From sequence record LR756501.1: a DNA stretch of 64,000 bases; one strand, 5' to 3'. Under the pieces are notes generated by a model. The model did not search any database. It was not told where the DNA came from and saw only the letters and a program-made list of their open reading frames with translations. Shown here one piece after another: positions 1 through 58,083 of this stretch. How positions within the stretch are numbered: position 1 is the stretch's first letter; each line of letters opens with the position of its first letter. The position numbers and the translations under genes are program-made.

Positions 1-363
1 CCAAAAGAAGAGATTGAAAGAATGAAAGACGAAGCTAAAGTGAATGAAGAATCTGATAGAAAAGAAAAAGAGAAGATTGATAAATTGAATATGGCTGATA
101 GTATGATATTCCAAACTGAAAAGAACATTAAAGAGTTTGGTGATAAATTAACTCAGGATGATAGAGATACTCTAAATGAAGTATTAGATAGACTCAAAAC
201 TGCTCATAAATCTCAAAATGTAGATGATTGTGACGTTTATCTGAAAGATTTAAATGATAAGTGGAACGTGATTTCCACAAGAATGTATCAGGAAACTGCT
301 TCCAACGAACAAGGTCCAAAAGCTGAAGATCCAGTAGATGTTGAATACGAAGAGGTTAAATAA
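1..363 (+). CDS. dnaK: DnaK/Hsp70 chaperone, C-terminal part (5' truncated by window edge)
   Basis: Frame open from base 1: KEEIERMKDEAKVNEESDRKEKEKIDKLNMADSMIFQTEK...DVEYEEVK. This is the typical DnaK lid and tail, with a Bacteroidota-like ending. Confidence 0.93.
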   Translation, partial: PKEEIERMKDEAKVNEESDRKEKEKIDKLNMADSMIFQTEKNIKEFGDKLTQDDRDTLNEVLDRLKTAHKSQNVDDCDVYLKDLNDKWNVISTRMYQETASNEQGPKAEDPVDVEYEEVK

Positions 364-392
364 AAAAAGAGGGACTTAAGTCCCTCTTTTTT
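362..392. terminator. Bidirectional rho-independent terminator
   Basis: Inverted repeat AAAAAAGAGGGAC-TTAA-GTCCCTCTTTTTT between convergent genes. Confidence 0.85.
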
Positions 393-2508
393 ATGATCCA
401 TAACTATAATCAGATGCTCCACCTATACTATAATTAGCACCTCTCCAATCTTTATCTACCATTATTCTTCCATCGCCGTTACATCTAGGACAAGGACTTC
501 CGTCTTGTTGTCTCCCCCAACCAGAGCAGTTCCAACATTCTACTTCTTTCAAACCTTTTGTTTTAGGGGTCTTCTTAGGTTCTTCTTTTTTCTTTACTTT
601 ATCTTTAACTGCTTTAGCGATTTCTTCTTCCTCTTTCTCTTCTGGTACTCCGTGTTTTTTAATAAACTCGTCGTATAGTTTTAATTTTGGATCTTCGGAG
701 TATAATTTATCTTCTAATTCTTTTACTTTATCTGGTTCTTTCTTTGCTGCCTTTTTACCTTTTGGTTTGGCTTCAGGTTTGGCTTCTGCTTTTGCCTTAT
801 TATCTTCTTCAGCTATTTTATCTATCTCTTTCACACGTTTTGAGGTGGGAGATTCTTTTCCTATTTTTACCCCCCTTGATATTTCATCATAATAATCACC
901 CAATTCGTAATTATCTTTAAATTTTTGCTTTACAGCTTTTGGTTTACCTTCTACTGGTTCAAGTGTTGCTTCACCCTCATCGAAGTGTACCGTTATAACT
1001 CTACCGTCATCAAGTTCGAATTTAACGCTTTGTTGATTTCTACCATTTTTAATTCTACCACCTTGATAAGTACCAATTTCCCCGTTATATTTACTACCTG
1101 GATTAATATATTTAACAAGATTCTTACCTAATTTAGCATCTTCTTCCTGTAAAAATTTCATCCATTTAGCTGAGCCAGTAAGTTGTTCAGCCTTTTTCGG
1201 ATTATAATTAGCACCAATTATAGGTTTCGAAGAACCAGAAATATCTATTGGTGGAGGATAAGGGTACCCCTTGTCTGACCACGATTGATAATTTTTATAT
1301 TGGTCTGGAGTCAAAATAGGCGCTGCCTTCTTTTTCTTCTTTTCTTCTTCCTCTTCTATAATATCGTCTTCTATAGATCCTATAATATCTTCAACGTCAT
1401 CATGATTCATTTCTGTTAAATCGTCCATGTAATATTCAGCGAATAATCTTGCTTTGACCTTAGGATCACAACCATTTACTATATCTTGAATTTCTTCTTC
1501 ATATTCGTTACCTGGAAGTTCTCCTCTTTTTTGTAAATCTCTATAAATATCATCTTCCATTTTAAGCAGAGCATCCATCGGAACATTTTCTAACTCCTGT
1601 ACATCAAATAATTTCAATATTTCTTTTTTTACTGCTGGTTCTGACCCATCCAAGAAGACCTTTACTTGTTGCTTTGACGTTCCTTTTTTGTTTTTCCAAT
1701 AGTTATTAACATCGTATGGATTTTTAATAAACCATTTATCTTCCCATTTTTCTTCCTCCTTTGGATCTGGATAATCTTTCCACCAATCAGTCTCGCCAGT
1801 TCTTTTCATGTAAGCTTCGCTCTTACCAAATTCTACAATTCCTGCTCCTCCACAAAGATCACAATTACTTTTACCAGTTGACGATTTACCCGAACCACCA
1901 CATGCTGGGCATTCATCTAAAGCATCTTCTGCGTCTTTAATATCATCTTCATCTATGTCGTCTTCATCTATGTTTTTAATTGGTATAACAGGCATTCCCA
2001 TAGCTAATCCTGTTTTTGGATCAACAAAATTATTTCTATTTAATATCTTTTCTTTTTCGTCTTCGTCCCACTTTTCTTCCCCATAAGGATCAATTGATTT
2101 CATTGCTTTATCTTTTATATCGTGTAACACGTAAGCACATTTATCTAACATAAAATCAATAGTGTCTTTATGTTGTGATCTCTTATTAACCTTAAACTTT
2201 CTATCGTAAATTACTTCACCTTCTTTGTTAGTTATAGTGAGTGCGAACAATACTTCGTCATTTAAACCAAGACTTTTCTTTATTACAAAAGTATAACTCT
2301 TCTCAGTAGATTTAGCTTCCTTATTATCTTTATCTATTTCAAAATCATCACCTTTGAGCATTTTGATTTCTTCTTTAGAAAATTCATCAATAGGAAGCTT
2401 ATTAATTCTTTCTGCTTCTTCGTCTTCAAGATGTTGTTTGATTTTAGAAGGAGTCATTTTACGTTTTAACTCTTCGTTTATTTGAGAATATTTCCTGATG
2501 TAGTCCAA
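391..2508 (-). CDS. Large acidic/Lys-rich protein with two pairs of DnaJ-type CxxCxGxG zinc-finger motifs and a DPYGEEKW motif
   Basis: CPACGGSG..CDLCGGAG and CWNCSGWG..CPRCNGDG; no HPD J-domain; TTG start; N-terminus MDYIRKYSQINEE. Confidence 0.7.
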   Translation of the reverse strand: MDYIRKYSQINEELKRKMTPSKIKQHLEDEEAERINKLPIDEFSKEEIKMLKGDDFEIDKDNKEAKSTEKSYTFVIKKSLGLNDEVLFALTITNKEGEVIYDRKFKVNKRSQHKDTIDFMLDKCAYVLHDIKDKAMKSIDPYGEEKWDEDEKEKILNRNNFVDPKTGLAMGMPVIPIKNIDEDDIDEDDIKDAEDALDECPACGGSGKSSTGKSNCDLCGGAGIVEFGKSEAYMKRTGETDWWKDYPDPKEEEKWEDKWFIKNPYDVNNYWKNKKGTSKQQVKVFLDGSEPAVKKEILKLFDVQELENVPMDALLKMEDDIYRDLQKRGELPGNEYEEEIQDIVNGCDPKVKARLFAEYYMDDLTEMNHDDVEDIIGSIEDDIIEEEEEKKKKKAAPILTPDQYKNYQSWSDKGYPYPPPIDISGSSKPIIGANYNPKKAEQLTGSAKWMKFLQEEDAKLGKNLVKYINPGSKYNGEIGTYQGGRIKNGRNQQSVKFELDDGRVITVHFDEGEATLEPVEGKPKAVKQKFKDNYELGDYYDEISRGVKIGKESPTSKRVKEIDKIAEEDNKAKAEAKPEAKPKGKKAAKKEPDKVKELEDKLYSEDPKLKLYDEFIKKHGVPEEKEEEEIAKAVKDKVKKKEEPKKTPKTKGLKEVECWNCSGWGRQQDGSPCPRCNGDGRIMVDKDWRGANYSIGGASDYSYGS

Positions 2509-2994: not shown

Positions 2995-3474
2995 ATGAGT
3001 AAGATTGATAAATTTTTGGACTATTATTACTTTTTAAGTAATTTTTATATGCACCCTCTTTTCTATAAAGGAAAAGAATATAGATCTGTTGAACACGCTT
3101 ACCAAGCTTGCAAAGCTGATAATGAAGCCGAACACGAGTACATTAGAAATCTTGATACGGCAGGTAAAGCAAAAAGAGCTGGTAGAAATGTGAAGATGCG
3201 TGAAGATTGGGAATTCATTAAGATTGAATTGATGTTTGATCTTCTCAAAACAAAATTCAGAGATAAAGAATTAGCAAAACAATTACTTGAAACAGGTGAC
3301 GATATTCTAATTGAAGGCAATTACTGGCACGACAATTTCTGGGGAGATTGCACATGCGAAGCCTGTAAAGACATTGAAGGCAAAAATATGTTGGGTAAAC
3401 TCTTAATGAAAGTGAGAGATATTAAAAGACAATGGTACGAATTAAACGATTTTCCTAATCAACCTTTCATATGA
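2995..3474 (+). CDS. NADAR (YbiA-like) family protein
   Basis: FLSNFY, SVEHAYQACK, LLETGDDILIEGNYWHDNFWG, GKNMLGKLLMKVR motifs. Confidence 0.93.
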   Translation: MSKIDKFLDYYYFLSNFYMHPLFYKGKEYRSVEHAYQACKADNEAEHEYIRNLDTAGKAKRAGRNVKMREDWEFIKIELMFDLLKTKFRDKELAKQLLETGDDILIEGNYWHDNFWGDCTCEACKDIEGKNMLGKLLMKVRDIKRQWYELNDFPNQPFI

Positions 3475-3732: not shown

Positions 3733-3906
3733 ATGAGCGACGAAATTAAAAAAATGGACGAAGAAATTCGTGAAATGGAACATCAATTAGATCACGACTA
3801 CGAAGATATGGCAGATAACATCCGTTTGAAAGAAAAACAAATGGAAGAAGATATTATTAAGAATCAAGAGATTCTAAAGAAATACGTGAAAGAAAATCAT
3901 TTATGA
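3733..3906 (+). CDS. Small coiled-coil hypothetical protein (57 aa, not in ORF track)
   Basis: Translated by hand as MSDEIKKMDEEIREMEHQLDHDYEDMADNIRL...ENHL*; A-rich start immediately after the upstream stop. Confidence 0.6.
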   Translation: MSDEIKKMDEEIREMEHQLDHDYEDMADNIRLKEKQMEEDIIKNQEILKKYVKENHL

Positions 3907-4254
3907 TTTATTTAACTCAATTAGTTTATTATAAATGATTTCACCGTATTTATTACCAACTTGCATACTTTCCATCGCCACAATTCCCATCTTAGATAGA
4001 TAGGTTTTACCTAAATCAGTTTTATAAAATTCAATTATTCCAAGTATTTCTTCGTTAGTGAAGTACTTATCATATATTGGAATAATTTCGTTTTCTATAT
4101 CTTTTATAACATCTTCTATATCAACGTTTTCTTCTTTATAATTTGGAATAAGATGTTTAACGGCGTTTATAACTGTTATAGCGGAATTTTCGTATGATTT
4201 AGTACCACCGTTTAATTCTAAAAGAGTTTTTATATTTTTAATTTTTTCTTCCAT
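3901..4254 (-). CDS. DUF2059-like protein
   Basis: IYDKYFTNEEILGIIEFYKTDLGK matches the DUF2059 signature. Confidence 0.75.
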   Translation of the reverse strand: MEEKIKNIKTLLELNGGTKSYENSAITVINAVKHLIPNYKEENVDIEDVIKDIENEIIPIYDKYFTNEEILGIIEFYKTDLGKTYLSKMGIVAMESMQVGNKYGEIIYNKLIELNKS

Positions 4255-4790
4255 TATTCTGACCAGTTTTCCTCTCCGTAAGGATCAAGTTCGTTATAAA
4301 CTCTAATACCTTCTGAAATGATTTTTTCTTTTGGTTTAATATATTCAGCGTCTGGATTAAACGAGTCATTTGATCTATTAACAGCGTCAAATGAAAAAAC
4401 TTTCTTTATATTCACTGTTCCATCTGAATTAACAGAACCAGCTGCTCTTGGTCTAAATACAAAATCTCCACCTTTATCTAAAATGTCTTTTAGTTCTTTA
4501 CCACAGGATGTGTTTAAAATCTTTATTTCGCCAACTACCTTATCGTCTTCGATTCTAACATTTTCGATGGTGTGGGATACTCTACGTAGAGTAGTATCAA
4601 ATGTATCTGGATAACCTAATTCCCCGTAAGCAACGTGTAATCTCTCTTGTTTTTCGTTGAACTCTTTAATGCAATTTCTCAAGTTTTCGTTATCTTGATA
4701 TATTCTACCGTTTAAATTAAGTTGATTTAAAGGTATTAGTGTTGTTGTAAATTTTTCTTTCATATTATTAGATTGCTTTTTCAAACCCAT
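4254..4790 (-). CDS. T4 gp21-like prohead protease homolog, probably catalytically inactive
   Basis: NLNGRIY, AYGELGYP (gp21 GELNHP), VSH, GEIKILNT.CG, FRPRAAGSV (gp21 VSSRGLGS), FDAV; C-terminal DPYGEENW. Confidence 0.78.
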   Translation of the reverse strand: MGLKKQSNNMKEKFTTTLIPLNQLNLNGRIYQDNENLRNCIKEFNEKQERLHVAYGELGYPDTFDTTLRRVSHTIENVRIEDDKVVGEIKILNTSCGKELKDILDKGGDFVFRPRAAGSVNSDGTVNIKKVFSFDAVNRSNDSFNPDAEYIKPKEKIISEGIRVYNELDPYGEENWSE

Positions 4791-4992
4791 CGGGTCTATT
4801 CATTGTGGGTGGATTTTCGTACCACCATTTTTCAAACCACACTTTATCTCTAAACGCAAAACATTTCCAAGCTTGCCACGCAGCCTCTTTCATAGAATCT
4901 TCTATGAATCTCTTTAGTGATTCATTCTCATTGATTTTTTCTAACCAATAATCACTCATTTCATCGTCCAATATTTTCTCAGATCTCGTCAT
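4768..4992 (-). CDS. Hypothetical protein
   Basis: 74-aa ORF in a co-oriented cluster; start may be at 4959. Confidence 0.5.
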   Translation of the reverse strand: MTRSEKILDDEMSDYWLEKINENESLKRFIEDSMKEAAWQAWKCFAFRDKVWFEKWWYENPPTMNRPDGFEKAI

Positions 4993-5437
4993 TTTTCCAA
5001 GTCCTATCCGCTGTATTTTTTAAAATGTTGTATAATTGTTCACTCATACCGAATTTCTCTTTACCAACTTCCAATGATTTCCAAATATTACCGTTATTAT
5101 TCTTTTCAGATGAAGCTTTCCAATCAAAAAACATTTCACATATATCATATAAATCCATATCATCAATACCGTTTGGATAATGCTCTGGATGATGTGTATT
5201 AACTTTATGGTGAGTTTTAAGAAGAGGTTCAATTGTTTTCAACATTTCTTCGTACTCTTTAGATCCGTATTCAAATTTATATTGTGTTGGTAATTTTTCT
5301 AACATTTCTATTTCTGGTGAAGAAAGTTTAGACATATCGTGAACCGCCGCCCTTGAATTCAGTGTGCTTGTAAACTCTTTCACTAAATTGTAGACTCTAC
5401 TTATATGTAAAGATATTGCTTCCCTAGTTACTCCCAT
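4979..5437 (-). CDS. DUF5662-like HD-related protein
   Basis: HDMSKL, HHKVNTHHPEHY, DICEMFFDWKAS motifs. Confidence 0.8.
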   Translation of the reverse strand: MGVTREAISLHISRVYNLVKEFTSTLNSRAAVHDMSKLSSPEIEMLEKLPTQYKFEYGSKEYEEMLKTIEPLLKTHHKVNTHHPEHYPNGIDDMDLYDICEMFFDWKASSEKNNNGNIWKSLEVGKEKFGMSEQLYNILKNTADRTWKNDEI

Positions 5438-6361: not shown

Positions 6362-6805
6362 TTATTTTATTTTTGTACTACCAAACCCACCTTCACCTCT
6401 ATCTGTTTCAGATAATTCACTAGATAATTCCAAATCGCCTTTAACGTATTCACTTATAACCATTTGTGCTATTCTATCACCGTTATAAACGTGGAAAGGT
6501 TCATTTGATAAATTAATTAAGATAACACAAACTTCTCCTCTATAATCACTATCAATTGTACCTGGTGTATTTAATACAGTAATACCGCTCTTTATAGCCA
6601 TTCCACTTCTTGGTCTGATTTGAACTTCGTAACCAATTGGAATTTCCATATATAATCCTGTATGAATCATTTGTCTTTCCATTGGTAGTAATGTAGTTTT
6701 TCCTTCGTGCACATATGCTCTAATGTCCATGCCAGCAGATCCATCTGTGGCGTAGGATGGAAGTTCGTTATTTGATTTATTTACTATTTTTATCTTCATT
6801 TCCAA
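6362..6805 (-). CDS. dut: dUTPase
   Basis: [40 protein letters not shown]: all five conserved motifs. Confidence 0.97.
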
Positions 6806-7133: not shown

Positions 7134-7164
7134 AATAAAAAAGGGAACCATTTCTGGTTCCCTT
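7134..7164 (-). terminator. Rho-independent terminator
   Basis: On the minus strand AAGGGAACCA-GAAA-TGGTTCCCTT followed by a U-tract, downstream of 7190..8068. Confidence 0.8.
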
Positions 7165-8087: not shown

Positions 8088-8375
8088 TTAAGGTTTCCAT
8101 TCTTTCTTTTCTTCTGGGTGTACCATTTTCAATTCTTCGTCTGTAAAATGAAAAATATTTTTAACAATCCATTCAACGTTAAAATAAGGTCTTCCTTCTT
8201 TATCGTAAACAGATTGTAAAGAAGATGCTACTGATACTCTTTTTTCAATGAGATCTAAAGCGTTATACTCATCAATCACTTCATCTTGTTTATCGTTGTT
8301 GTAAACAGTATCGAAAGCAATTTGTTCTTGTTCTGTGAGCGAATTATAAAGCTCAAATAATTCTATACCTGTCAT
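8088..8375 (-). CDS. Small protein resembling the C-terminal segment of T4-type portal gp20
   Basis: DLIEKRVS...GRPYFNVEWIVKNIFHFTDEEL resembles gp20 EILERRIN...[21 protein letters not shown] (sequence recalled, not aligned). Confidence 0.45.
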   Translation of the reverse strand: MTGIELFELYNSLTEQEQIAFDTVYNNDKQDEVIDEYNALDLIEKRVSVASSLQSVYDKEGRPYFNVEWIVKNIFHFTDEELKMVHPEEKKEWKP

Positions 8376-10118: not shown

Positions 10119-12548
10119 TTACTTTTTAACTGTTGATGTTTTTGGTTTCAATTTTTCTGCTACACCTTCTAAAAGAGGTTCTAATGAAGAACCTTTGATA
10201 GTATCTTGTAGAGATTTAAATCCACCGTTTTCACCAAAGAAACCATTGCTTTGTTCCTTTAGATTTCTTGCTAAAATCTCTGTCTGACTTACACCACCAA
10301 TAGTGATAAGAGCTTCGATTAATCCTGGTTGGATTGCTTCGAGTTTTCTTCTTGTCTCTTCAATTCCTATCTCTGTAAGTGCTCTCTTAGTCTCGATTTC
10401 TAAATTATCTGATTTACTCTTATCCGACAAATCAATGTCGTTGAGAGCACTGCCGAATTCAGTATCAGCTAATTTCATTTTTCTGTTACCTTCGTTCAAC
10501 TTATCTTCTTCATTCAATTTTTCAAGTGCCTTTTTGATTGAAAGAATTTCAGTTGTTGCAGTTTCCATTATCTTATTTCTCTGAATAGTCTGTTGAGCTT
10601 TAAAAAGTTCTTCATCTTGTTTCAAAGACATGAAACTCAGATTATTCTGAATGGTTTTCTTCTGAACTGCTTTTAAAAGATTATCAATTTCTTGATCGTC
10701 TATGCTAGTTTGAAGAACCTCTACATCATAAATCTTCATTCCATTCTCTTCAAATTTTCTGCCTGGTCTCTTTTGTCCTTCTACTGATTTACCTAAGATA
10801 GTATCTCTGATTAAATCAACTCCGTTCTTCTGGAATTCATCTACTGATACCTTCTTAATAGTATTTCTAAGGATCGAACGAATGTTCTGTGTAAGTAATT
10901 TAACATAGTTTGATACAGTAAACCAATTCTTAGCGTGAGATTCTTCAAAGTTAACTCTGTAAGAAAGTCTAATTTTGAGTTTTACCATATCAGAAGTTTC
11001 AGCCTCAATAATATCAGAAACAATATTATTACTGATTTGTAAGTAAGCAGTCTTCAAAAGATCGTGATCTGTCTTTGGTTTGCCTGTTGAAAGTTCCATT
11101 ACCTCTAAGGTTTCGTCATATTCCAACATAATAACTTTAGGACCGATTTCGACTCTTCTATCACCTTTCTTACTGATGACTTGTACTGCGTATCCTGGCC
11201 ACACATTGATATTAACCGCTCCATCATATTTAGTATCTAAAGTTATGGTTCTTGGTTTTGTAAATGAACTCTTCCTCTTTAATTCGTCAGAGAAAGCAGC
11301 TGGGCCAGCTGATGATACTGCTCCATAAACTTTATTAACAGCATTTGAGTAAACAGTTGATGCTACGTAACCTCTTGAGAGAGTCTCTGGGGAATTCATT
11401 AAAGAAATTTTAGCCAATTCGTCATTGTGCTCAATTGCTTCAGAATTACCCGGAAACATAACTGCTATAGATTTCTTATCCAAGATACGTTTAATAATAA
11501 CCTTTTTTCTTGGATCTGGAAGTAACATCAATGGACCTTTGACTAAATCAATCTTACCACTTTCTTTATCCAATACGTATCTTGCTTCACCATCTGGGAC
11601 GGTAACTGCGTAATGGATAGGATCTTGATTATCATATGTCACTATTGAGTGCTCTGGTCTTGGGTAATAAATCTTAGTTTCTTTACCTGTGATAAAGAGC
11701 TCTTCACCAGCTTTAAATTCAACATCACCTTCTTTATAATTGGCTATAACCTTAATATAAAGTCCCATATTTTCATTGAGTTCGATGGCTTTAAACTTAC
11801 GTTTACCTTCTTTCTCAACAAAATTTTCAGTAGGCTTTGGAAAAACCACAGCTGGACCGTTTACAAATCTTTTCTCACCATTTTCATCTAAAAGAATACA
11901 ATATTCTAACATTTCTAAGGTCTCAGCCTTGCGAATATAATTGTTTCCTTCTAACGGTATGACTTCCATACCTGTTGGTGGAATAAAAAAAGATACGTCA
12001 GTACCTTTAATAACTATAAGCTTACCTGTAACTAAATTTGATTTATCAAAAATATCTTTCTTGCTTTCTTGATTAGTAATAACAACAGATTTCTCAATGT
12101 TCTCACGAACTTCCTTGTCGTTATAAACTCTTGCGATAAGATATTCATTTGATTTTAATTGGTGCCCATCGATAACCCTGGCTATTTGTCCTGGGTAAAG
12201 AGCGAAAGTATCAGGACCAGAAATGTTTATTTTCTTCCCGATTGATAAAGTAGCGGATTGTTTTGATTTTGATCCTGGGTGTCTGTTAAACGTCTCAGCA
12301 TCAACTTGAGGATTAACTAGTTCGATATATTGGCCTTCAGTTGCCTTTATCCAAGCTAGTATCGCTTCCAGCTTTGAGTCGCATGGTACGAATTTACTAG
12401 ATTTTGGATCGTAAGAGACTAACTTATCTGTATCAGATAAACTTGTCTTAAACGGTCCAACGATTACTTCTACATTTCCAATTGTGCCATCTTGGATGAA
12501 TGCGTACATCCCCTGGGATAGTACGAGATCGCCTTTTTTGTCTTCCAT
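10119..12548 (-). CDS. Major vault protein (MVP) homolog
   Basis: Tandem beta repeats (GPDTFALYPGQ, GPAVVFPKPTE, KGPLMLLPDP), then AVQV..K.GDRRVEIGPKVIMLEYDETLEVMELSTGKPK, SDIIEAETSDMVKLKIRLSYRVNF (MVP shoulder/SPFH domain), then a long cap helix. Confidence 0.85.
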   Translation of the reverse strand: MEDKKGDLVLSQGMYAFIQDGTIGNVEVIVGPFKTSLSDTDKLVSYDPKSSKFVPCDSKLEAILAWIKATEGQYIELVNPQVDAETFNRHPGSKSKQSATLSIGKKINISGPDTFALYPGQIARVIDGHQLKSNEYLIARVYNDKEVRENIEKSVVITNQESKKDIFDKSNLVTGKLIVIKGTDVSFFIPPTGMEVIPLEGNNYIRKAETLEMLEYCILLDENGEKRFVNGPAVVFPKPTENFVEKEGKRKFKAIELNENMGLYIKVIANYKEGDVEFKAGEELFITGKETKIYYPRPEHSIVTYDNQDPIHYAVTVPDGEARYVLDKESGKIDLVKGPLMLLPDPRKKVIIKRILDKKSIAVMFPGNSEAIEHNDELAKISLMNSPETLSRGYVASTVYSNAVNKVYGAVSSAGPAAFSDELKRKSSFTKPRTITLDTKYDGAVNINVWPGYAVQVISKKGDRRVEIGPKVIMLEYDETLEVMELSTGKPKTDHDLLKTAYLQISNNIVSDIIEAETSDMVKLKIRLSYRVNFEESHAKNWFTVSNYVKLLTQNIRSILRNTIKKVSVDEFQKNGVDLIRDTILGKSVEGQKRPGRKFEENGMKIYDVEVLQTSIDDQEIDNLLKAVQKKTIQNNLSFMSLKQDEELFKAQQTIQRNKIMETATTEILSIKKALEKLNEEDKLNEGNRKMKLADTEFGSALNDIDLSDKSKSDNLEIETKRALTEIGIEETRRKLEAIQPGLIEALITIGGVSQTEILARNLKEQSNGFFGENGGFKSLQDTIKGSSLEPLLEGVAEKLKPKTSTVKK

Positions 12549-35847: not shown

Positions 35848-36807
35848 TTAGTACCTATTTCTGTTCCATTTATTATTAAGATCTCCCCAAAAACCATCAC
35901 CAGATGGCGTATCACTCCAGTGTAAACAATTATCTATAATATCTAATTTTGAATTTTTCAGTACGTTATTAAAATTATCTTTATATTTTTGGTGGCAATA
36001 TTTAATGAATTCATCGTAAGCCCCATTTTTTATAAGAAAGTCTCTAAACTTATCGTCTGTTATAAAATCAATATAATCTGGTACATTATAATCTATATTT
36101 GGGTCAAGGGTTAATTTGCCTTTATTATACCATTTAACAGCCTCATCCATATCATCGTCGTAGGCTCCAATTTTTTTATTCCATTTTGTATCAAGATTAG
36201 ACCAAAATCTAGAACCTCTTGAATTGTGTGTTGAATCATCCCAAGAAAAAGCGTTATCTATATATTGTTCTCTATCGTTATTTTTAAAATCTCTTTTAAA
36301 ACCTGGTTCACAACTAGCGACATAATCATCGTAACAAAAATTATATATTAGAAACTCTCTAAACTCGTTATCTGTTATAAAATCATCGAATTCTTTCTCT
36401 GGTGGCGATACGAAGTTTGTATCTATTGTTAATTTACCTTTCTTATACCATTTGACTGCTTCGTTATTTATTACTAATCTGAATAAGTCTGATATAACTG
36501 ATTCAAGATGGCAATTATATCTTGTTTTTGTTTTACCTTCTGGTGTATTATAAAAATAATATTTTAATTGGTCTTCTAATTGATCAGATATTTTATTATA
36601 TACTTCTCTGAAAGTTTTCATGTATTCATCGTTGGAATATTCGTTCCATTTTTTAAATTTATATTTATTAAATACAGAAAGAATTACACTTTTCTCTATT
36701 TCTACATCTTCTGGTTTTATTATCAAACCAAATTCAGCTTCACTTTTAAGAACGTTATTGTGAATAATATCAAGTAATAAACTATGGTCTTTAAATTCTC
36801 TAATCAT
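35848..36807 (-). CDS. Hypothetical protein with internal module duplication
   Basis: Two copies of EAVKWYxKGKL...FITD..FR.FL...ID....W......FW..L..KW. Confidence 0.7.
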   Translation of the reverse strand: MIREFKDHSLLLDIIHNNVLKSEAEFGLIIKPEDVEIEKSVILSVFNKYKFKKWNEYSNDEYMKTFREVYNKISDQLEDQLKYYFYNTPEGKTKTRYNCHLESVISDLFRLVINNEAVKWYKKGKLTIDTNFVSPPEKEFDDFITDNEFREFLIYNFCYDDYVASCEPGFKRDFKNNDREQYIDNAFSWDDSTHNSRGSRFWSNLDTKWNKKIGAYDDDMDEAVKWYNKGKLTLDPNIDYNVPDYIDFITDDKFRDFLIKNGAYDEFIKYCHQKYKDNFNNVLKNSKLDIIDNCLHWSDTPSGDGFWGDLNNKWNRNRY

Positions 36808-37399
36808 TGTCTATATTATCTTTTAGGAAATCTGAAAATCTATTATATTTTTTCCATTCTGTTTTTAAAAATATTCCCTCAGCCTTATTTATTAATTCTA
36901 CACTTTCCTTATTTCTCAATTTATGTGGTTTAACTTCGTAATCTAATCTACATAAATCTAAACCATCTGCGTCTCTTAATATAGAAACAGTTTGCCAATA
37001 CGGATTTTCTCTTTCTATTTCATATCTTTCTGAATGATTAGATATAGCTAATCTTATAGCTTTTAAATCTTCTTCATTCATACCATTTTTAATAAAGAGT
37101 TCTTTAAAGAGTGGGAATTTTTCTGAAGCAGCGTCTTTACCGTGTACTTTACAATTATCGTCATTTCTTCTTGCCATATCGTGAACAAAAGCCGCCATGA
37201 ATGCCCTTTTAGTGTTGAGTTTATCTCCTATTTCATTACCAATCATAAGACAATTAAACATAACTCTGAATGTGTGATTAATACCGTGTATATCAGATTT
37301 ATGATTAAAATTATCATCAGATAAATTAAAATCGTTAAAGTTTATATTTAAACTCTTGGTGAAGTCCATAAAGTTATATTTACTAAATTCTTTAATCAT
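36800..37399 (-). CDS. HD-domain phosphohydrolase
   Basis: IHGINHTFRV, FVHDMAR, HG..AA, NHS, LRDADGLD; probable start MIKEFSKY at 37399. Confidence 0.85.
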   Translation of the reverse strand: MIKEFSKYNFMDFTKSLNINFNDFNLSDDNFNHKSDIHGINHTFRVMFNCLMIGNEIGDKLNTKRAFMAAFVHDMARRNDDNCKVHGKDAASEKFPLFKELFIKNGMNEEDLKAIRLAISNHSERYEIERENPYWQTVSILRDADGLDLCRLDYEVKPHKLRNKESVELINKAEGIFLKTEWKKYNRFSDFLKDNIDND

Positions 37400-39923
37400 T
37401 CCATTCCTCCTCTCCATATGGATCATTTGGATGTAATTTCAATCTCAACTCTTCTCTTTTTCTATTTATCTCTGTATTAAAGATATGTTGAATTTTTACT
37501 TCCTTATAATCTCTTAATTTATCCATTTGTATATAATCTTTGAACGGATTGACTTCTTCAATCTCACCATGCTTATAAATTCTATCACACATTATAGCGT
37601 TCCATCCCCAGTCACTATGAGTAGAATGGAATCTAAAAACATACAACAACATTTTCTTTCTTTTTTTAGTTATAAGTTTATTTTCTTTTCCTGGTCGTTC
37701 AAGAACGTCGTAATCATTTTTATCATAAGGAATTTCACATATTATTCTGTACCATTCGCCCTTTCTTAAAAAAGGAACTATATAATCTTCGAAGTAATTG
37801 TGCCAACGTTTTAACTCCAGTTCTTCGCCTGTTTTATTAAATTCAACGTATTCATTTATTTTACTTTCATTCCATATTTCTTCACCGTAAGGATCAATAT
37901 CTATGTTTATCAAACTCAATTCCTCTTTATCTTTATCAAATTTTTTACACAATTTTTCTCTCTCGTCATAAGTTATTTTTAAAGCTTTTTCGGATTTTAT
38001 TGGGTAAAATAATTTGCCCCTAACCTCGCGATCTAATTTAACTGTATAACTATTAAAATGACTATCATCAACAAAAACTATTTCACCTGTTAGATTTGGA
38101 TATTTATCATATACACAAAGTATTGAATCACCAACTTTAAAATTTTCATTTATTTTACTCTCATTCATATATAAATAATTATCCATATAATCTTGGTCTA
38201 AAAATAGAACATCTTTATTAAGCGATGAATATCGAACTCTTTCAGCGTTACCGTATTCATTTTTATTATATTTTCCTACCCAATGATAAGGCACTAATTC
38301 AATTTTATCTTTTTTAATTCTTTCTATTTCTCTTTCTGAGATAGGTGATAAAACTTGATGTTTTTTAATTATATTCAAATCTTGTGTTCCGCCAAAAGAA
38401 TGTATTTGGTAATGACTTGTTAAAAAAGCAAAATAATAATCGTAACTACCTAAAAATTTCTTTTTGAAGACAATATACTTATCCTTAAAGTCGTCGTCGT
38501 TAATTTTAACATCCCAACCCCAGTCTTCTTCACCGTAAGGATCAATTTCAGCCATTTTTATTCTAGTGGCGTTTCTTTTCTTACTCTTTTTGGATTCCCA
38601 TACTTCTTCACCATAAGGATCTAGTTCTTTTTGTTTTAATCTTCTTTCTTCTTTCTCCTTCTCTAATTTTCTCCATAACTCTTTTATTCTATCTTCATAT
38701 TCTTCATAAGGAACTACATCAAAATTGGCTAAATTCCACCAACCATCTTTATCAATCCAATTATCATTTTTCGGTAATGGCCCTCTAATAAGAGTTATAC
38801 CATGTGAAATAGTTCTCACATCTTGAATTTTAATAGGTAATCCGACTGGATAACCACTCCCAGTGAACACTGGTTCTCCGCCTCTGTCAAACGCAAATGA
38901 TGCTTGATCTTTACTCTTTAAAATAGCTATTTTACCAATTAATTCATTACCTAGGTTTTCAACTATTTCCAATGGCATAATCTTATGAACACCGATATCT
39001 TTTCCTTTTACTCTACTCCAATAATAATGATCAGTATTATTTATATTTGTGATTCTAAATTCTATATCTTCTAAACCAGGATTTGATACTTTAACAATAT
39101 CATTTATCTTTATATTTAAATTTTTAAATTTATTTCTATTTTCTCTATTTTCAGCTAATTCAATATGTTCAATAATTATATTTCTTTTTTCGTTCCATGT
39201 ATCTATTTTAATAGTTCCGAATCCACTTGGAGCCGGTCTAATTTCACCTTTTCTATATTCAAACATATAACCAATAGTGAAAATATCTGACAAATTAGCA
39301 GAAGTCTCCATTACCTTGATAACTTTATATCTATAATCATCGAATTTTATTCTATACCAGTTATCAATTTGGATAAAATCTTTTAATAACCCCATTCTAA
39401 CCAATTTAGCACGATCTTGTAAAACAAAAATCTCTTTTCCTCCACCAAAAAATTTATTATTTTTATTTATATACATATAATCAGGCACATGTGAAAAGTC
39501 AACGTATTCATTTAAATCATCATTTTTTTGTAATTTACCGTGCTTAAACCATCTCACTCTTGGTTCCTGTTCTGTTTCGGAGTAAACTTGAATAATATTC
39601 GGATTCATACAAAAATCAATAGTTCTAAATCTTATAGCTCGATCTTCTTTACTACCAATGTTAATGTATGGTTGATTTGATCCGAATACAATTTCTTTAG
39701 ACACTAATCCTACTATATCATTATCATCGTAATGAATCTTAATAAGTTTTCCTTTTAACGTATATGATAAATATTCTTTTACAGCGATATTATTATCCAC
39801 GTTCTCACGATATTTATAAGCATCAATTACTCTATTTAAACTTTTTAAATCATTTTCATTTAAATAATCAAGAAGATTGATCCATTCATCCACGTTCTCA
39901 AAGATGTTGTATTTTGTAATCAT
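37392..39923 (-). CDS. Multi-module polyprotein-like putative virion protein with four DPYGEExW motifs
   Basis: 843 aa; MITKYNIFEN start; internal LNE/INE junctions; KOW/SH3-like FKVGD...GEIV module. Confidence 0.7.
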   Translation of the reverse strand: MITKYNIFENVDEWINLLDYLNENDLKSLNRVIDAYKYRENVDNNIAVKEYLSYTLKGKLIKIHYDDNDIVGLVSKEIVFGSNQPYINIGSKEDRAIRFRTIDFCMNPNIIQVYSETEQEPRVRWFKHGKLQKNDDLNEYVDFSHVPDYMYINKNNKFFGGGKEIFVLQDRAKLVRMGLLKDFIQIDNWYRIKFDDYRYKVIKVMETSANLSDIFTIGYMFEYRKGEIRPAPSGFGTIKIDTWNEKRNIIIEHIELAENRENRNKFKNLNIKINDIVKVSNPGLEDIEFRITNINNTDHYYWSRVKGKDIGVHKIMPLEIVENLGNELIGKIAILKSKDQASFAFDRGGEPVFTGSGYPVGLPIKIQDVRTISHGITLIRGPLPKNDNWIDKDGWWNLANFDVVPYEEYEDRIKELWRKLEKEKEERRLKQKELDPYGEEVWESKKSKKRNATRIKMAEIDPYGEEDWGWDVKINDDDFKDKYIVFKKKFLGSYDYYFAFLTSHYQIHSFGGTQDLNIIKKHQVLSPISEREIERIKKDKIELVPYHWVGKYNKNEYGNAERVRYSSLNKDVLFLDQDYMDNYLYMNESKINENFKVGDSILCVYDKYPNLTGEIVFVDDSHFNSYTVKLDREVRGKLFYPIKSEKALKITYDEREKLCKKFDKDKEELSLINIDIDPYGEEIWNESKINEYVEFNKTGEELELKRWHNYFEDYIVPFLRKGEWYRIICEIPYDKNDYDVLERPGKENKLITKKRKKMLLYVFRFHSTHSDWGWNAIMCDRIYKHGEIEEVNPFKDYIQMDKLRDYKEVKIQHIFNTEINRKREELRLKLHPNDPYGEEEWND

Positions 39924-40005: not shown

Positions 40006-40971
40006 ATGATTAAATTTAACCTAATAATTGATGGCAACTACCTACTACAAAAATCTGTTCACATACTTCACAAAAATAAAATATTAGTATCAGAATTATA
40101 CAACGTAATAGAAAGAGATTATCACACACTTACAAAATTATACCCATTCGATAAGATATACTTTATATCAGATAGTTTTAGAAATTGGAGAAAAGAATTT
40201 TTTGAAGGGTACAAAGGCACAAGAAAACGTGACGATAAAGTGGATTGGGACTTCGTCTTCGGTGAATACACCAAACTCAAAGAATTCCTTAAAACTAAAA
40301 AGAACTGCGTACAATTCCAAATGGATAACCTAGAAGGCGATGATCTTATTGCCTACGTTATGAAGACACTTAACAACAAAGGACAATCAAACTTCTTAAT
40401 GTCTAACGATAGTGACCTTTTACAACTAATTAACTACGACTTAGATAAGAGATATATCAATATAATGTATAATTACAAGATGACTGATGATAGAGTATTT
40501 ATACCTGAGCATTACCAAATATTTACTAAGTACGTAAAAGACACCTACGTTGATGATATGTTTGAAGATAACAATGAAACGGAATTCTTATCTTTTCTTG
40601 ATAATTTCACAAGAACAAGAAAGACTTCTCTTATCAATTCTGAATTAGAACTCTTTATGAAAGTAATGGGCCATAACAAAGATAATATCAAATCAGTATA
40701 TATGAAAGGTGATAGAGGTATAGGTAAAAGTGGTATTCTTAAAATATATGATACATACAAAGAAACCCATTCTGAACCAATTGATTTTAACTCAATTGAA
40801 TTTAAAGATAGAATTATAGATCATATTAAACTATATAAAAGATTGAAAGACAACAGCATGAATGAAATGATGAGTGATAGATTAACAAGAAATTTGACTT
40901 TAGTTAAATTGGATGAAACGTCTATGCCACCACATTTATATAAATTAATGAAGAAGGAGGTAAACTTATGA
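40006..40971 (+). CDS. T4 RNase H-like 5'-3' exonuclease (FEN family)
   Basis: IIDGNYL, WRKEFFEGYKGTR, EGDDLIA, SNDSDLLQL, KDNI motifs. Confidence 0.85.
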   Translation: MIKFNLIIDGNYLLQKSVHILHKNKILVSELYNVIERDYHTLTKLYPFDKIYFISDSFRNWRKEFFEGYKGTRKRDDKVDWDFVFGEYTKLKEFLKTKKNCVQFQMDNLEGDDLIAYVMKTLNNKGQSNFLMSNDSDLLQLINYDLDKRYINIMYNYKMTDDRVFIPEHYQIFTKYVKDTYVDDMFEDNNETEFLSFLDNFTRTRKTSLINSELELFMKVMGHNKDNIKSVYMKGDRGIGKSGILKIYDTYKETHSEPIDFNSIEFKDRIIDHIKLYKRLKDNSMNEMMSDRLTRNLTLVKLDETSMPPHLYKLMKKEVNL

Positions 40972-41489
40972 AAATAAAAGACATTTTGAAGAAATTAGGA
41001 ATTATTAAAAAAGAGTATGTTCCAATCGAACCTTATAGAGGCGGTAATATGTACGATTTGTTTGTTAAAAAGACTATTGATAAACGTTTAGGACGTAAAA
41101 ACACAGCGGTTATTGATGACGATAAAATTAATTGGAACTCAACTTATGAAGGACCAAAAATTAGGAGATTTACTATTCCTGTTAATGGTTTATCAAGAGA
41201 AGAGGCTGAAGATCAAATTAAGAAATTGATGAGTGAGTACCACGAAGATGTGGAGTGGAAGGATGATTATAAATTACCAGAAGTTAAAAGAGAATATTCC
41301 GATTTAGATCCTTACGGTGAAGAAAATTGGAACGATGATATTCACTCTTTTGATAAAGATTACTGGTTTCCCACTAAAAGACAAAAAAGTTTGATTGAAC
41401 AAGCCAAGATTATGTATTCAAAGAATAACGCCGCGATATATAAAAAGTTTGTAATACCTATTCCTAATTGGAACGCAGTTTTAGAATAA
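40968..41489 (+). CDS. Small protein with portal gp20-like segment and DPYGEENW motif
   Basis: RRFTIPVNGLSREEAEDQIKKLMSEYHEDV...DYWFP resembles the portal RRIFYIDVGNLP..KAEQ....M..Y...ED(F/Y)WLP segment. Confidence 0.5.
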   Translation: MKIKDILKKLGIIKKEYVPIEPYRGGNMYDLFVKKTIDKRLGRKNTAVIDDDKINWNSTYEGPKIRRFTIPVNGLSREEAEDQIKKLMSEYHEDVEWKDDYKLPEVKREYSDLDPYGEENWNDDIHSFDKDYWFPTKRQKSLIEQAKIMYSKNNAAIYKKFVIPIPNWNAVLE

Positions 41490-54780: not shown

Positions 54781-54843
54781 AAATATTTAAATTATTTGAA
54801 AAAAAAAATTTATATATAACGAAAAATTACTAACTTTGCTAAA

Positions 54844-55887: not shown

Positions 55888-55904
55888 AAAATAAAAATTA
55901 AGAT

Positions 55905-56990: not shown

Positions 56991-56999
56991 AAATAATAT

Positions 57000-58067: not shown

Positions 58068-58083
58068 AATAAACAAATTTTAA

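What the first reader, a model, noticed from the sequence alone, without database searches (positions are those of the whole stretch)
4254..4790. Protease-dead gp21 homolog carrying the DPYGEENW tag
Seen in sequence: a gp21-type scaffold in which GELNHP reads GELGYP and VSSRG reads FRPRA. Established: the T4 gp21 catalytic triad is His85/Ser140/Asp168, and the His and Ser fall in these two motifs. Inference: a pseudo-protease lying outside the head operon, possibly a regulator of head maturation (functionally like T4 Inh) or a dominant-negative poison against co-infecting T4-like phages.
Basis: partly seen in the sequence, partly recalled or inferred. Interest (0 to 1): 0.7.

Follow-up and report, generated by a model that had tools for sequence, protein, structure and literature searches.

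The report
Inactive head-protease copy carrying shared tag
A 735-kb phage carries, besides its real capsid-maturation protease, a well-conserved extra copy of the protease domain that has lost the catalytic serine and histidine and ends in a short peptide label that this group of huge phages attaches to hundreds of accessory proteins; what it does is still unknown.

Summary
The gene (probably 4254-4763, minus strand, 169 aa) encodes a T4 gp21-type protease domain: phrog_207 E 3e-19, AlphaFold2 pLDDT 90.5, Foldseek probability 1.0 to T4 gp21 (5JBL). T4 Ser140 is Arg, Ser141 is Pro, His85 is Tyr, and Asp168 is kept. The window is LR756501.1, the 735-kb "Mahaphage". Its real protease is the N-terminal domain of an 807-aa protease-scaffold fusion, lying between portal and capsid genes about 2.9 kb past the window end.

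The copy is not a decaying remnant. Of 143 short homologues, 119 carry Arg at the serine column, while 28/28 active-type references (27 long homologues plus T4 gp21) keep H/SSR/D. dN/dS is 0.15.

DPYGEE.W is a clade-wide terminal peptide: 7 copies in the window against 0.00 expected, and 268 instances in 120 viral loci. It sits on a predicted disordered tail. Other carriers include LRR proteins and mini-proteins built from fragments of capsid, portal, scaffold and sheath proteins.

My best reading is a non-cleaving mimic of the protease domain, docked through the tag. That mechanism is inferred. An inactive prohead-protease paralogue has a precedent (SPN3US gp117). I found no published description of the tag or of the fragment-mimic gene class.

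The parts
4254..4763 (-). Pseudo-protease gene (169 aa plus stop): a standalone gp21/S77-fold domain (residues ~1-135), a variable disordered linker (~136-153) and a terminal tag
   Evidence: ORF. Start inferred from orthologues and the gene call P0001. phrog_207 E 3.4e-19. AF2 pLDDT 90.5. Foldseek match to 5JBL, probability 1.0. dN/dS 0.15 against the L128 orthologue.
4764..4790 (-). In-frame upstream extension (MGLKKQSNN) of the maximal ORF; probably not translated, and it overlaps the end of the upstream gene
   Evidence: The upstream ORF 4768-4992 ends at 4768. All orthologues start at MK(D/E)xFT.
4605..4625 (-). GELGYPD, the counterpart of T4 GELNHPP; Tyr51 (4611-4613) occupies the His85 position and Gly50 the position that is Asp in 96% of the active set (Asn84 in T4)
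   Evidence: Alignments; family-specific positions; codons.
4443..4463 (-). FVFRPRA, the counterpart of T4 GVSSRG; Arg104 (4452-4454) occupies the Ser140 nucleophile position and Pro105 the Ser141 position; Arg106 = Arg142 is retained
   Evidence: In the short family, 119 of 143 have Arg at this column; 28 of 28 active-type references have Ser.
4386..4388 (-). Asp126, the retained counterpart of T4 Asp168; it covaries with Arg106/Arg142 across the family
   Evidence: Fisher test, p 1e-8.
4263..4286 (-). DPYGEENW tag at residues 160-167, two residues before the stop, preceded by the semi-conserved RVYNEL
   Evidence: The tail is predicted disordered (pLDDT under 50; 63-69).
3901..4254 (-). Downstream DUF2059 gene whose start overlaps the pseudo-protease stop (TAATG); the same pairing is found in the 84%-identical relative
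40968..41489 (+). Tagged 173-aa mosaic of portal segments (true-portal residues 64-89, 272-334, 259-285), with DPYGEENW in place of a portal loop; belongs to the same class of tagged assembly-protein mimics
   Evidence: BLASTP and phmmer against the true portal. Orthologue L107:9117-9560.
8088..8375 (-). Untagged 95-aa copy of portal residues 448-500
   Evidence: Conserved at the same relative position in L128/L129.
37392..39923 (-). 843-aa protein of unknown family carrying four DPYGEE.W tags, the last one at its C-terminus
   Evidence: No Pfam or PHROG match.
391..2508 (-). 705-aa protein with one internal tag and DnaJ-type CXXCXGXG zinc-finger motifs

Best explanation
Shown. The gene encodes a folded, standalone copy of the prohead-protease (T4 gp21 / S77) domain. 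It lacks the nucleophile Ser (now Arg), the following Ser (now Pro) and the general-base His (now Tyr). It also lacks the N-terminal segment that blocks the catalytic centre in T4 gp21 and that the true proteases of this clade retain, and it lacks the long scaffold extension of this phage's real protease. It belongs to a large family kept under purifying selection. That family retains the non-catalytic framework residues of the fold: N16, N18, R20, Y22, S63-H64 and the R106-D126 pair. A disordered linker of variable length joins the domain to a terminal peptide, (K/R)(I/V)(Y/F)xx(L/I)-DPYGEE.W. This phage clade places that peptide at the N- or C-terminus of hundreds of unrelated accessory proteins.

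Inferred. The protein is a non-cleaving mimic of the protease domain. It binds in trans something the real protease domain binds, either partner protease/scaffold subunits or Glu-containing cleavage motifs, without cutting. The tag is an address or docking peptide. The tag most likely brings the protein, along with the other tagged proteins, to the assembling prohead core, in the way T4's capsid-targeting sequence or encapsulin cargo-loading peptides work. There it would modulate maturation rather than perform it.
For: Fold and dead site.

Real protease elsewhere: an 807-aa protease-scaffold fusion with YGEFDHPD and IFVSSRAAG lies between portal and MCP. It is 45% identical to the pseudo-protease over 119 residues.

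Family census: 2076 homologues at E<=1e-3 among 1.84 billion representatives. All 28 active-type references (27 homologues of 400 aa or more plus T4 gp21) have H/SSR/D. Of 143 short homologues, 119 have Arg at the Ser140 column; among those, Pro follows in 98 and the His column reads Y 51, H 33, F 20. The catalytic states cluster on the tree.

Selection: dN/dS is 0.15 and 0.20 against two orthologues.

Missing pro-segment: alignments start at about T4 residue 36-40. T4 gp21 is a pentamer whose N-terminal region blocks the active centre until nine residues are self-cleaved (PMC9958956). The true proteases of this clade keep an equivalent VLI(V/I)E|N N-terminus.

Tag as a peptide-level signal: 7 in the window against 0.00 expected. 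Flanking DNA is not conserved and the motif codons vary synonymously. There are 268 instances in about 235 ORFs, enriched at both ends of the proteins, with 83 within 5 residues of the stop. The linker varies in length and the tail is predicted disordered.

Head connection of the tag (indirect): tagged carriers include fragments of MCP, portal, scaffold repeats and the pseudo-protease. PYGE|E resembles the repeated Y(I/L/V)(A/G)E of the scaffold domain and the SEYAE at the MCP N-terminus. That pattern fits the hydrophobic-x-Glu rule of T4 gp21. I rely on prior knowledge for that rule.
Against: There is no direct evidence for any binding partner, for presence in proheads or virions, or for cleavage at the tag.

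The gene sits in a tight minus-strand run with dUTPase and small genes, not with late or structural genes. Distant family members sit in unrelated contexts: a replication module, and a baseplate/neck module.

A tagged sheath fragment and many tagged LRR or enzyme-like proteins do not obviously belong inside a capsid.

Arg at the nucleophile position could simply fill the pocket rather than bind a Glu.

Tag-less family members exist in tag-free loci, so whatever the domain does, it does not need the tag.
Confidence: 0.4

Rival explanations
1. Anti-defence decoy. The pseudo-protease and the other tagged fragments of capsid, portal, scaffold and sheath proteins mimic the conserved phage proteins that bacterial immune sensors recognise. 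A non-cleaving protease domain could occupy or shield protease-sensing loops, such as those of CBASS CD-NTases, or bind other sensors without triggering them.
For: Prohead-protease activity is reported as a CBASS trigger (bioRxiv 10.64898/2026.03.04.709575). STAND receptors are reported to sense MCP, portal, tail tube and other core proteins (bioRxiv 10.64898/2026.01.04.697583). The mimic set found here covers protease, MCP, portal, scaffold and sheath, and is built from the most conserved segments of those proteins. Many co-tagged proteins are LRR binding modules. The gene sits among early-type accessory genes.
Against: No defence or anti-defence family matches. Fragments of sensed proteins could just as well trigger sensors as block them. 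No host or sensor is known for this uncultured phage. Nothing links the tag to host proteins.
Confidence: 0.2
2. Inh-like regulator of the phage's own head maturation. The dead domain enters mixed oligomers with the protease-scaffold protein, or caps its substrate sites, and so delays or limits activation.
For: It is 45% identical to the phage's own protease domain. T4 gp21 works as a pentamer (PMC9958956), so mixed rings are conceivable. Framework residues are retained. The genome also has a separate 76-aa copy of the protease N-terminal blocking segment (record ~240978-241205), which suggests that protease control by paralogous pieces may occur.
Against: There is no homology to T4 Inh. The gene is not co-located with head genes, and the three related 634-642-kb phages give only one protease-domain match each; two of these matches were read as ORFs and are the true protease. 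Oligomer-interface conservation was not tested.
Confidence: 0.15
3. Receptor for the tag. The former protease groove, now unblocked and lined by Arg104/Arg106, binds the acidic DPYGEE.W peptide, or Glu-containing sites in general, without cutting. The pseudo-protease would then be the reader that gathers tagged proteins.
For: The tag and the pseudo-protease are both present in the 735-kb genome. The three related huge phages give no second protease-domain match, and no tag was found in the 150 kb sampled from two of them, LR756502 and LR756504. The tag contains a hydrophobic-small-Glu triplet similar to the presumed cleavage sites. The groove lacks the auto-inhibitory N-terminal segment.
Against: The Arg140 family extends to phages whose loci carry no tag. 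The protein carries the tag itself, like a client. The models give no sign that the tail docks onto the domain: tail pLDDT is under 50 with tagged orthologues only. Sampling of the relatives was partial.
Confidence: 0.1
4. Poison subunit against co-infecting related phages. The dead domain, like the other fragments, co-assembles into competitors' proheads and blocks their maturation.
For: Dominant-negative behaviour is expected in general for inactive subunits of oligomeric enzymes. The fragments consist of the segments most conserved between related phages.
Against: It would also threaten the phage's own assembly. Nothing marks the self/non-self difference. There is no exclusion phenotype or context.
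Confidence: 0.08
5. Still a hydrolase, using other residues (for example the conserved Ser63-His64 with Asp126), or else a decaying remnant without function.
For: Ser63 and His64 are 97-99% conserved in the family. A minority of short relatives keep the canonical H/S/D (P0103, P0074, P0095, P0037).
Against: Ser63-His64 are equally conserved in the active proteases that also have the canonical triad, and they are absent from T4 gp21, so they look like a clade-specific framework feature. Decay is contradicted by dN/dS of 0.15, by the invariant Arg, and by more than 100 clusters at 50% identity.
Confidence: 0.05

Closest known systems
T4 gp21 prohead protease (MEROPS/Pfam Peptidase_S77; PDB 5JBL)
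   Same: Same fold (Foldseek probability 1.0, TM 0.61-0.63). Shared invariant framework residues N51, N53, R55, Y57, G81, R142, G145 and D168 in T4 numbering.
   Different: Ser140 is Arg, Ser141 is Pro and His85 is Tyr. There is no N-terminal blocking/self-cleavage segment. The gene is not in the head module. It scores below the Pfam gathering threshold (24.7 against 27). It has a C-terminal disordered tail with the DPYGEE.W tag.
The phage's own protease-scaffold fusion (LR756501.1 73913-76336, 807 aa) and its Mahaphage/Lak orthologues
   Same: 45% identity over the protease domain. Both share the clade-specific VSH motif.
   Different: The fusion keeps H/SSR/D and the N-terminal VLIVE|N segment. 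It also carries about 600 aa of scaffold with about twelve Y(I/L/V)(A/G)E repeats, and it lies between portal and MCP. It has no tag.
'Cryptic' prohead-protease paralogues of phiKZ-like giant phages (SPN3US gp117, 201phi2-1 gp206, PhiPA3 gp143; PMC5694885)
   Same: A short standalone extra copy of the prohead-protease fold, in a giant phage that also has a real protease, presumed inactive and of unknown function. The model matches the 145-aa 201phi2-1 protein B3FJ68 (E 3.8e-6, probability 1.0).
   Different: A different lineage, with 12% identity in the structural alignment. gp117 is reported to align with the catalytic Ser and Asp and to lack only the His. Here the Ser is replaced by a family-invariant Arg. 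No tag is reported for those proteins.
T4 capsid-targeting sequence and encapsulin cargo-loading peptides (functional analogy for the tag only)
   Same: A short peptide at the N- or C-terminus, on a flexible tether, shared by unrelated proteins. N-terminal carriers have a 16-24-residue leader (MIKNFKIFEQLxxxDI-DPYGEE.W), comparable in length to the ~10-aa T4 CTS described in PMC9958956.
   Different: No sequence relation. Packaging of tagged proteins has not been shown. The tag also occurs internally and in several copies per protein.
T4 Inh (minor head protein, inhibitor of gp21)
   Different: No detectable sequence similarity (best BLASTP E 0.10).

Membership tests
Peptidase S77 (T4 gp21 prohead protease) | gp21 / herpesvirus-assemblin-like fold | tested here: met
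   AF2 pLDDT 90.5. Foldseek match to 5JBL, probability 1.00, TM 0.61-0.63. phrog_207 E 3.4e-19.
Peptidase S77 (T4 gp21 prohead protease) | Nucleophile Ser (T4 Ser140) | tested here: not met
   Arg104 aligns with Ser140. The same holds in 119 of 143 short homologues.
Peptidase S77 (T4 gp21 prohead protease) | General-base His (T4 His85) | tested here: not met
   Tyr51 aligns with His85.
Peptidase S77 (T4 gp21 prohead protease) | Third triad residue Asp (T4 Asp168) | tested here: met
   Asp126 aligns with Asp168, an invariant column.
Peptidase S77 (T4 gp21 prohead protease) | Score above the Pfam gathering threshold | tested here: not met
   24.7 bits against a cut-off of 27.
Peptidase S77 (T4 gp21 prohead protease) | N-terminal pro-segment that blocks the active centre and is self-cleaved | tested here: not met
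   The alignment begins at about T4 residue 36-40. The true proteases of the clade have VLI(V/I)E|N at residues 5-10. The T4 mechanism is taken from PMC9958956.
Peptidase S77 (T4 gp21 prohead protease) | Gene within the head module, next to or fused with scaffold, portal and MCP | tested here: not met
   The gene lies 62 kb from the portal / protease-scaffold / MCP cluster and is flanked by DUF2059, DUF5662 and dUTPase genes.
Peptidase S77 (T4 gp21 prohead protease) | Proteolytic activity on core and capsid proteins after Glu | not testable with these tools
   Requires recombinant protein and peptide substrates.
Inactive prohead-protease paralogues of giant phages (SPN3US gp117 type, PMC5694885) | A short standalone second copy of the protease fold in a genome that also has a complete protease | tested here: met
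   There are two matches in LR756501.1, this gene and the 807-aa fusion.
Inactive prohead-protease paralogues of giant phages (SPN3US gp117 type, PMC5694885) | Common descent with gp117 / 201phi2-1 gp206 | tested here: inconclusive
   Only a structural match to B3FJ68 (E 3.8e-6, 12% identity). The nearest sequence relatives are Mahaphage-type proteases. Independent duplication is likely.
T4 Inh protease inhibitor | Sequence homology to Inh | tested here: not met
   Best BLASTP E 0.10.
Capsid-targeting / cargo-loading peptide (analogy for the tag) | Terminal position on a flexible tether, on many unrelated proteins | tested here: met
Capsid-targeting / cargo-loading peptide (analogy for the tag) | Tagged proteins are found inside proheads or virions, and the tag is sufficient for loading | not testable with these tools
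   The phage is uncultured. This needs proteomics of particles or a heterologous assembly system.

The most novel reading that the evidence does not exclude
DPYGEE.W is the address label of a previously undescribed protein-targeting system in a clade of huge phages. It gathers dozens to hundreds of accessory proteins per genome, including LRR binders and a battery of mini-proteins copied from conserved pieces of capsid, portal, scaffold, sheath and protease. The gp21 fold would be the element that recognises the label: the real protease as its processing enzyme, and the Ser-to-Arg pseudo-protease as a non-cleaving reader or competitor. The tagged mimics would then be either loaded into the capsid for injection or deployed as decoys against host sensors of the core phage proteome.
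Probability: 0.2. Interest if true: 0.85.

Novelty: new variant of a known kind. Interest (0 to 1): 0.62.

Why it matters
Inactive copies of the prohead protease have been noted once before in phiKZ-like giant phages, and their function is still unknown. This case adds three things.

- It shows a large, separately evolved family in which the nucleophile is replaced by an invariant arginine. That points to a new function rather than decay.
- It ties one branch of that family to a short peptide label shared by hundreds of accessory proteins in the largest known phages.
- It shows that these phages keep whole sets of small genes copied from pieces of their own capsid, portal, scaffold and sheath proteins.

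If the label is a capsid-loading or docking signal, it would give a direct handle on which proteins huge phages package or co-localise. It would also be a simple portable tag to test. If the mimics are decoys, they would be a new anti-defence strategy aimed at sensors of conserved phage proteins.

Tried and rejected
1. DNA repeat or mobile-element origin of the tag. Rejected: the flanks are unrelated and the motif codons vary synonymously.

2. The tail docks onto its own domain (cis auto-inhibition). Not supported: tail pLDDT is 63-69 with the broad alignment and under 50 with tagged orthologues only.

3. Homology to T4 Inh. None found.

4. Defence or anti-defence and NCBIfam annotation of the gene and its neighbours. 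Nothing relevant.

5. Sequence search of the PDB with the query and with the true protease domain. No useful hit; only the fold search found 5JBL.

6. Literature search for the tag peptide. Only unrelated eukaryotic hits.

7. Conserved synteny as a clue. Only the closest relative keeps the DUF2059 pairing. Distant members sit in replication or baseplate/neck modules.

8. Promoter and terminator scan. Promoter-like sites are at chance level. One strong terminator-like hairpin at 7141-7164 (minus strand) lies upstream of the gene string.

9. PHROG annotation of the large genes at 46-62 kb. Uninformative.

10. A first count of eight tags in the window was an artefact of overlapping search patterns. 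The correct number is seven.
Full report
**Source of the window.** Bases 1-25000 are identical to LR756501.1 positions 7061-32060. This is the 735,411-bp "uncultured phage", the largest genome reported in Al-Shayeb et al. 2020 (PMC7162821). It belongs to the Mahaphage clade, with a predicted Bacteroidetes host. The window has no N and is 31% G+C.

**The observation.** A 178-aa ORF lies at 4254-4790 on the minus strand. It contains AYGELGYPD, FVFRPRAAG and a C-terminal DPYGEENWSE. Orthologues and the database gene call start at the second Met (MKEKF...). The upstream gene stops at 4768-4770. The gene is therefore most likely 4254-4763, 169 aa.

Evidence that it is a gp21-type domain:
- phrog_207 "head maturation protease" scores E 3.4e-19.
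- Pfam Peptidase_S77 scores 24.7 bits, below the cut-off of 27.
- The AlphaFold2 model built on 120 sequences has pLDDT 90.5 and pTM 0.78.
- Foldseek finds T4 gp21 (5JBL) as the only strong PDB match: probability 1.00, TM 0.61-0.63, rmsd 2.9 A over 134 columns. Herpesvirus proteases follow far behind.

In alignments that include T4 gp21 itself (sequence taken from NC_000866):
- Tyr51 falls on His85.
- Arg104 falls on Ser140, and Pro105 on Ser141.
- Arg106 falls on Arg142, and Asp126 on Asp168.

The H/S/D triad of T4 gp21 is the one quoted in PMC5694885.

**The real protease.** tblastn shows two matching places in this genome. The second is at record 73916-74623. It is the N-terminal domain of an 807-aa protein (record 73913-76336) lying between a T4-type portal (608 aa) and the major capsid protein (608 aa). 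That is about 2.9 kb beyond the window's end and 62 kb from the pseudo-protease.

This protein keeps YGEFDHPD and IFVSSRAAG. It starts MIKNVLIVE|N, comparable to T4's MNEPQLLIE|T. It continues into a scaffold region with about twelve Y(I/L/V)(A/G)E repeats. The 634-642-kb relatives (LR745206, LR756502, LR756504) each give only one protease-domain match. In the two whose ORFs I read, that match is the same kind of fusion.

The pseudo-protease is 45% identical to its own genome's protease domain over 119 residues. It lacks about the first 36-40 residues. In T4 that segment blocks the catalytic centre until self-cleavage (PMC9958956).

**Not a remnant.** The word-indexed search of 5.8 billion clusters gave 25 homologues. 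Among them are standalone orthologues of 158-175 aa at 51-84% identity, all with FR(P/S)R, and most with the C-terminal tag. The exhaustive search of 1.84 billion representatives gave 2076 hits at E<=1e-3 and 333 at E<=1e-10.

I aligned all 169 sequences retrieved, plus T4 gp21 and the true protease of this phage. The states at the catalytic columns are:
- All 28 active-type references (27 homologues of 400 aa or more, including this phage's own fusion, plus T4 gp21) have H / SSR / D.
- Of 143 short proteins, 119 have Arg at the Ser140 column. Pro follows in 98 of those.
- In those 119, the His column reads Tyr 51, His 33 and Phe 20.

Positions that separate the two groups are Ser140Arg (100%), Ser141Pro (82%) and Asp84Gly (75%). 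N16, N18, R20, Y22, G47, S63-H64, R106 and D126 are shared by both groups. Arg142 and Asp168 covary inside the Arg family (Fisher p 1e-8), so that pair looks structural. The catalytic states cluster strongly on a FastTree phylogeny. Nei-Gojobori dN/dS is 0.15 against the 84%-identical orthologue and 0.20 against a 58% one. A few short relatives keep H/S/D (P0103, P0074, P0095, P0037).

**Genomic context.** The gene sits in a tightly packed minus-strand string. It runs downstream of a strong terminator-like hairpin at 7141-7164. The string comprises a 107-aa ORF, dUTPase, three unknown ORFs (207, 97 and 74 aa), DUF5662, the pseudo-protease, and a DUF2059 gene whose ATG overlaps the pseudo-protease stop as TAATG.

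The 84%-identical relative keeps this arrangement. More distant family members lie among small unknown genes, between RecA and DnaB-like genes, or among baseplate and neck genes. No member examined lies in a head module.

**The tag.** The degenerate DNA pattern for DPYGEE.W occurs 7 times in the window, against 0.00 expected. The carriers are:
- the pseudo-protease;
- a 705-aa protein with DnaJ-type zinc fingers;
- an 843-aa protein (four copies, one of them C-terminal);
- a 173-aa portal mosaic.

Flanking DNA is unrelated and the motif codons vary synonymously, so selection acts on the peptide.

These hold 268 instances in about 235 ORFs, and 83 instances lie within five residues of the stop. 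The position distribution is bimodal. One class has an N-terminal leader, MIK(N/K)(F/Y)K(I/L)FEQLxxxD(I/V)-DPYGEE.W. The other has a C-terminal (K/R)(I/V)(Y/F)(S/N)(D/E)(I/L/V)-DPYGEE.W-(D/E)(D/E/N)-stop.

Of 136 tagged proteins of at least 110 aa, 19 are LRR proteins. Most have no Pfam family.

In 380 kb sampled from the 735-kb genome I counted 42 tags, 16 of them between 130 and 180 kb. No tags were found in the 150 kb sampled from LR756502 and LR756504, two of the three relatives without a second protease-domain match. None were found in the head modules either. Tag-less pseudo-proteases sit in tag-free loci. Tagged ones fall mostly in one subclade (21 of 23 in a 35-row clade).

The linker between domain and tag varies from about 6 to 30 residues. 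The tail is predicted disordered when only tagged orthologues are used (pLDDT under 50). I found no paper that mentions this peptide in a phage context.

**A class of tagged mimics.** I searched the tagged ORFs with this phage's portal, protease-scaffold and MCP, and with T4 structural proteins. Thirteen small proteins (117-237 aa) turned out to be built from pieces of virion proteins:
- six MCP fragments or mosaics, one of which also carries a piece of the protease domain;
- two scaffold-repeat fragments;
- one portal mosaic;
- a T4-gp18-like sheath C-terminal domain;
- two pseudo-proteases;
- one further small ORF with a weaker MCP match.

Locus L104 has five such genes in a row. In L041 the pseudo-protease is followed directly by a tagged MCP fragment.

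The window itself holds two portal copies: 40968-41489, tagged, a mosaic of portal residues 64-89, 272-334 and 259-285; and 8088-8375, untagged, residues 448-500. Elsewhere in the sampled genome there are a portal 64-268 paralogue, three MCP fragments (one tagged), and a 76-aa copy of the protease's N-terminal blocking segment. The pseudo-protease is the most complete member of this class.

**Mechanism.** Shown:
- a folded gp21 domain without the nucleophile and the base;
- no pro-segment and no scaffold region;
- conserved as a family with an invariant Arg;
- a disordered tether ending in a clade-wide terminal peptide.

Inferred: it acts as a non-cleaving mimic of the protease domain, in trans, and the tag is a docking or address peptide.

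I favour delivery to the prohead core (confidence about 0.4) for these reasons:
- the label's terminal, tethered placement;
- the N-terminal leader class, which recalls the ~10-aa T4 capsid-targeting sequence (PMC9958956);
- the head-protein origin of many carriers;
- the likeness of PYGE|E to the scaffold repeats Y(I/L/V)(A/G)E and to SEYAE near the MCP N-terminus.

The weaknesses are the early-type gene context, the tagged sheath fragment, and the complete lack of direct evidence.

Rivals:
- a decoy for host sensors of protease activity or of core phage proteins (bioRxiv 10.64898/2026.03.04.709575 and 10.64898/2026.01.04.697583);
- a receptor for the tag;
- a poison subunit against competing phages;
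- residual or alternative catalysis;
- decay, which the conservation data exclude.

**Comparison with what is known.** The closest precedent is the "cryptic protease" paralogue of phiKZ-like giant phages (SPN3US gp117, 201phi2-1 gp206, PhiPA3 gp143; PMC5694885). The model matches the 145-aa 201phi2-1 protein structurally.

The present family differs in three ways. Its nearest sequence relatives are Mahaphage-type proteases. Its serine is replaced by an invariant Arg, whereas gp117 is reported to align with the Ser and Asp. One branch carries the tag. It is not a member of S77 in the enzymatic sense, because two defining residues, the pro-segment and the Pfam threshold are all not met. It shows no relation to T4 Inh.

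**Verdict.** I rate the finding a new variant of a known kind (inactive prohead-protease paralogues). It has an unexplained and apparently undescribed companion feature, the DPYGEE.W label and the tagged mimic genes, which is where most of the interest lies.

Noticed in passing
It comes with a stereotyped N-terminal leader class (MIKNFKIFEQLxxxDI-) and a C-terminal class (KRIYSDI-...-EE-stop). I found no publication on it.
   Followed up: partly
window 40968-41489 (+) and 8088-8375 (-): Two small genes are copies of pieces of the phage's own portal protein. One is a scrambled mosaic of residues 64-89, 272-334 and 259-285 with the tag replacing a loop. The other is an untagged copy of residues 448-500. 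Both are conserved in relatives (L107, L128).
   Followed up: partly
L104:877-3253, L041:1507-2803, L102:4887-5336, L081:6565-7131, L024:8621-9238; LR756501.1 142020-143045, 145888-146124, 276345-276932, 730388-730708: Arrays of small tagged genes are built from fragments, often scrambled, of the major capsid protein, scaffold repeats, portal and tail-sheath C-terminal domain. They use the most conserved segments of those proteins.
   Followed up: partly
LR756501.1 ~240978-241205 (L142 ~10978-11205, +): A 76-aa ORF (MKNVLIKEKD...) copies residues 2-65 of the real protease. This includes the N-terminal segment that blocks the active centre in T4 gp21, so it is a more direct candidate for a protease inhibitor than the pseudo-protease.
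   Followed up: no
L004:5998-8421 (LR756501.1 73913-76336), just beyond the window end: The real prohead protease is fused to a ~600-aa scaffold region with about twelve 14-residue repeats, NI(A/K)Y(S/A)EY(I/L/V)AE(N/H)(L/V)D. These are presumably serial cleavage sites. The MCPs of this clade share SEYAE/AEYAE near the N-terminus.
   Followed up: partly
window 53695-59109 (+): Five tandem genes of 341-361 aa, without a PHROG match, follow a 1550-aa protein with a weak minor-tail-protein match. They look like a paralogous structural gene array upstream of the head module.
   Followed up: no
window 391-2508 (-) and 22-363 (+); L128:8428-12418: The tagged 705-aa protein with DnaJ-type CXXCXGXG zinc fingers lies next to a phage-encoded Hsp70/MreB-like gene in the close relative. 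The window start probably cuts the same gene.
   Followed up: no
window 2995-3474 (+), 4979-5437 (-), 6362-6805 (-), 36800-37426 (-), 40006-40971 (+): Accessory genes around the finding: NADAR domain, DUF5662, dUTPase, HD-domain protein and 5'-3' exonuclease.
   Followed up: no
window 7141-7164 (-): A strong terminator-like hairpin (10-bp stem followed by a T-run) lies upstream of the minus-strand gene string that contains the pseudo-protease.
   Followed up: no
proteins P0103, P0074, P0095, P0037, P0072: A minority of short standalone relatives keep His, Ser and Asp at the catalytic columns. P0037 also carries the tag. The short family therefore spans possibly active and clearly inactive members.
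   Followed up: no
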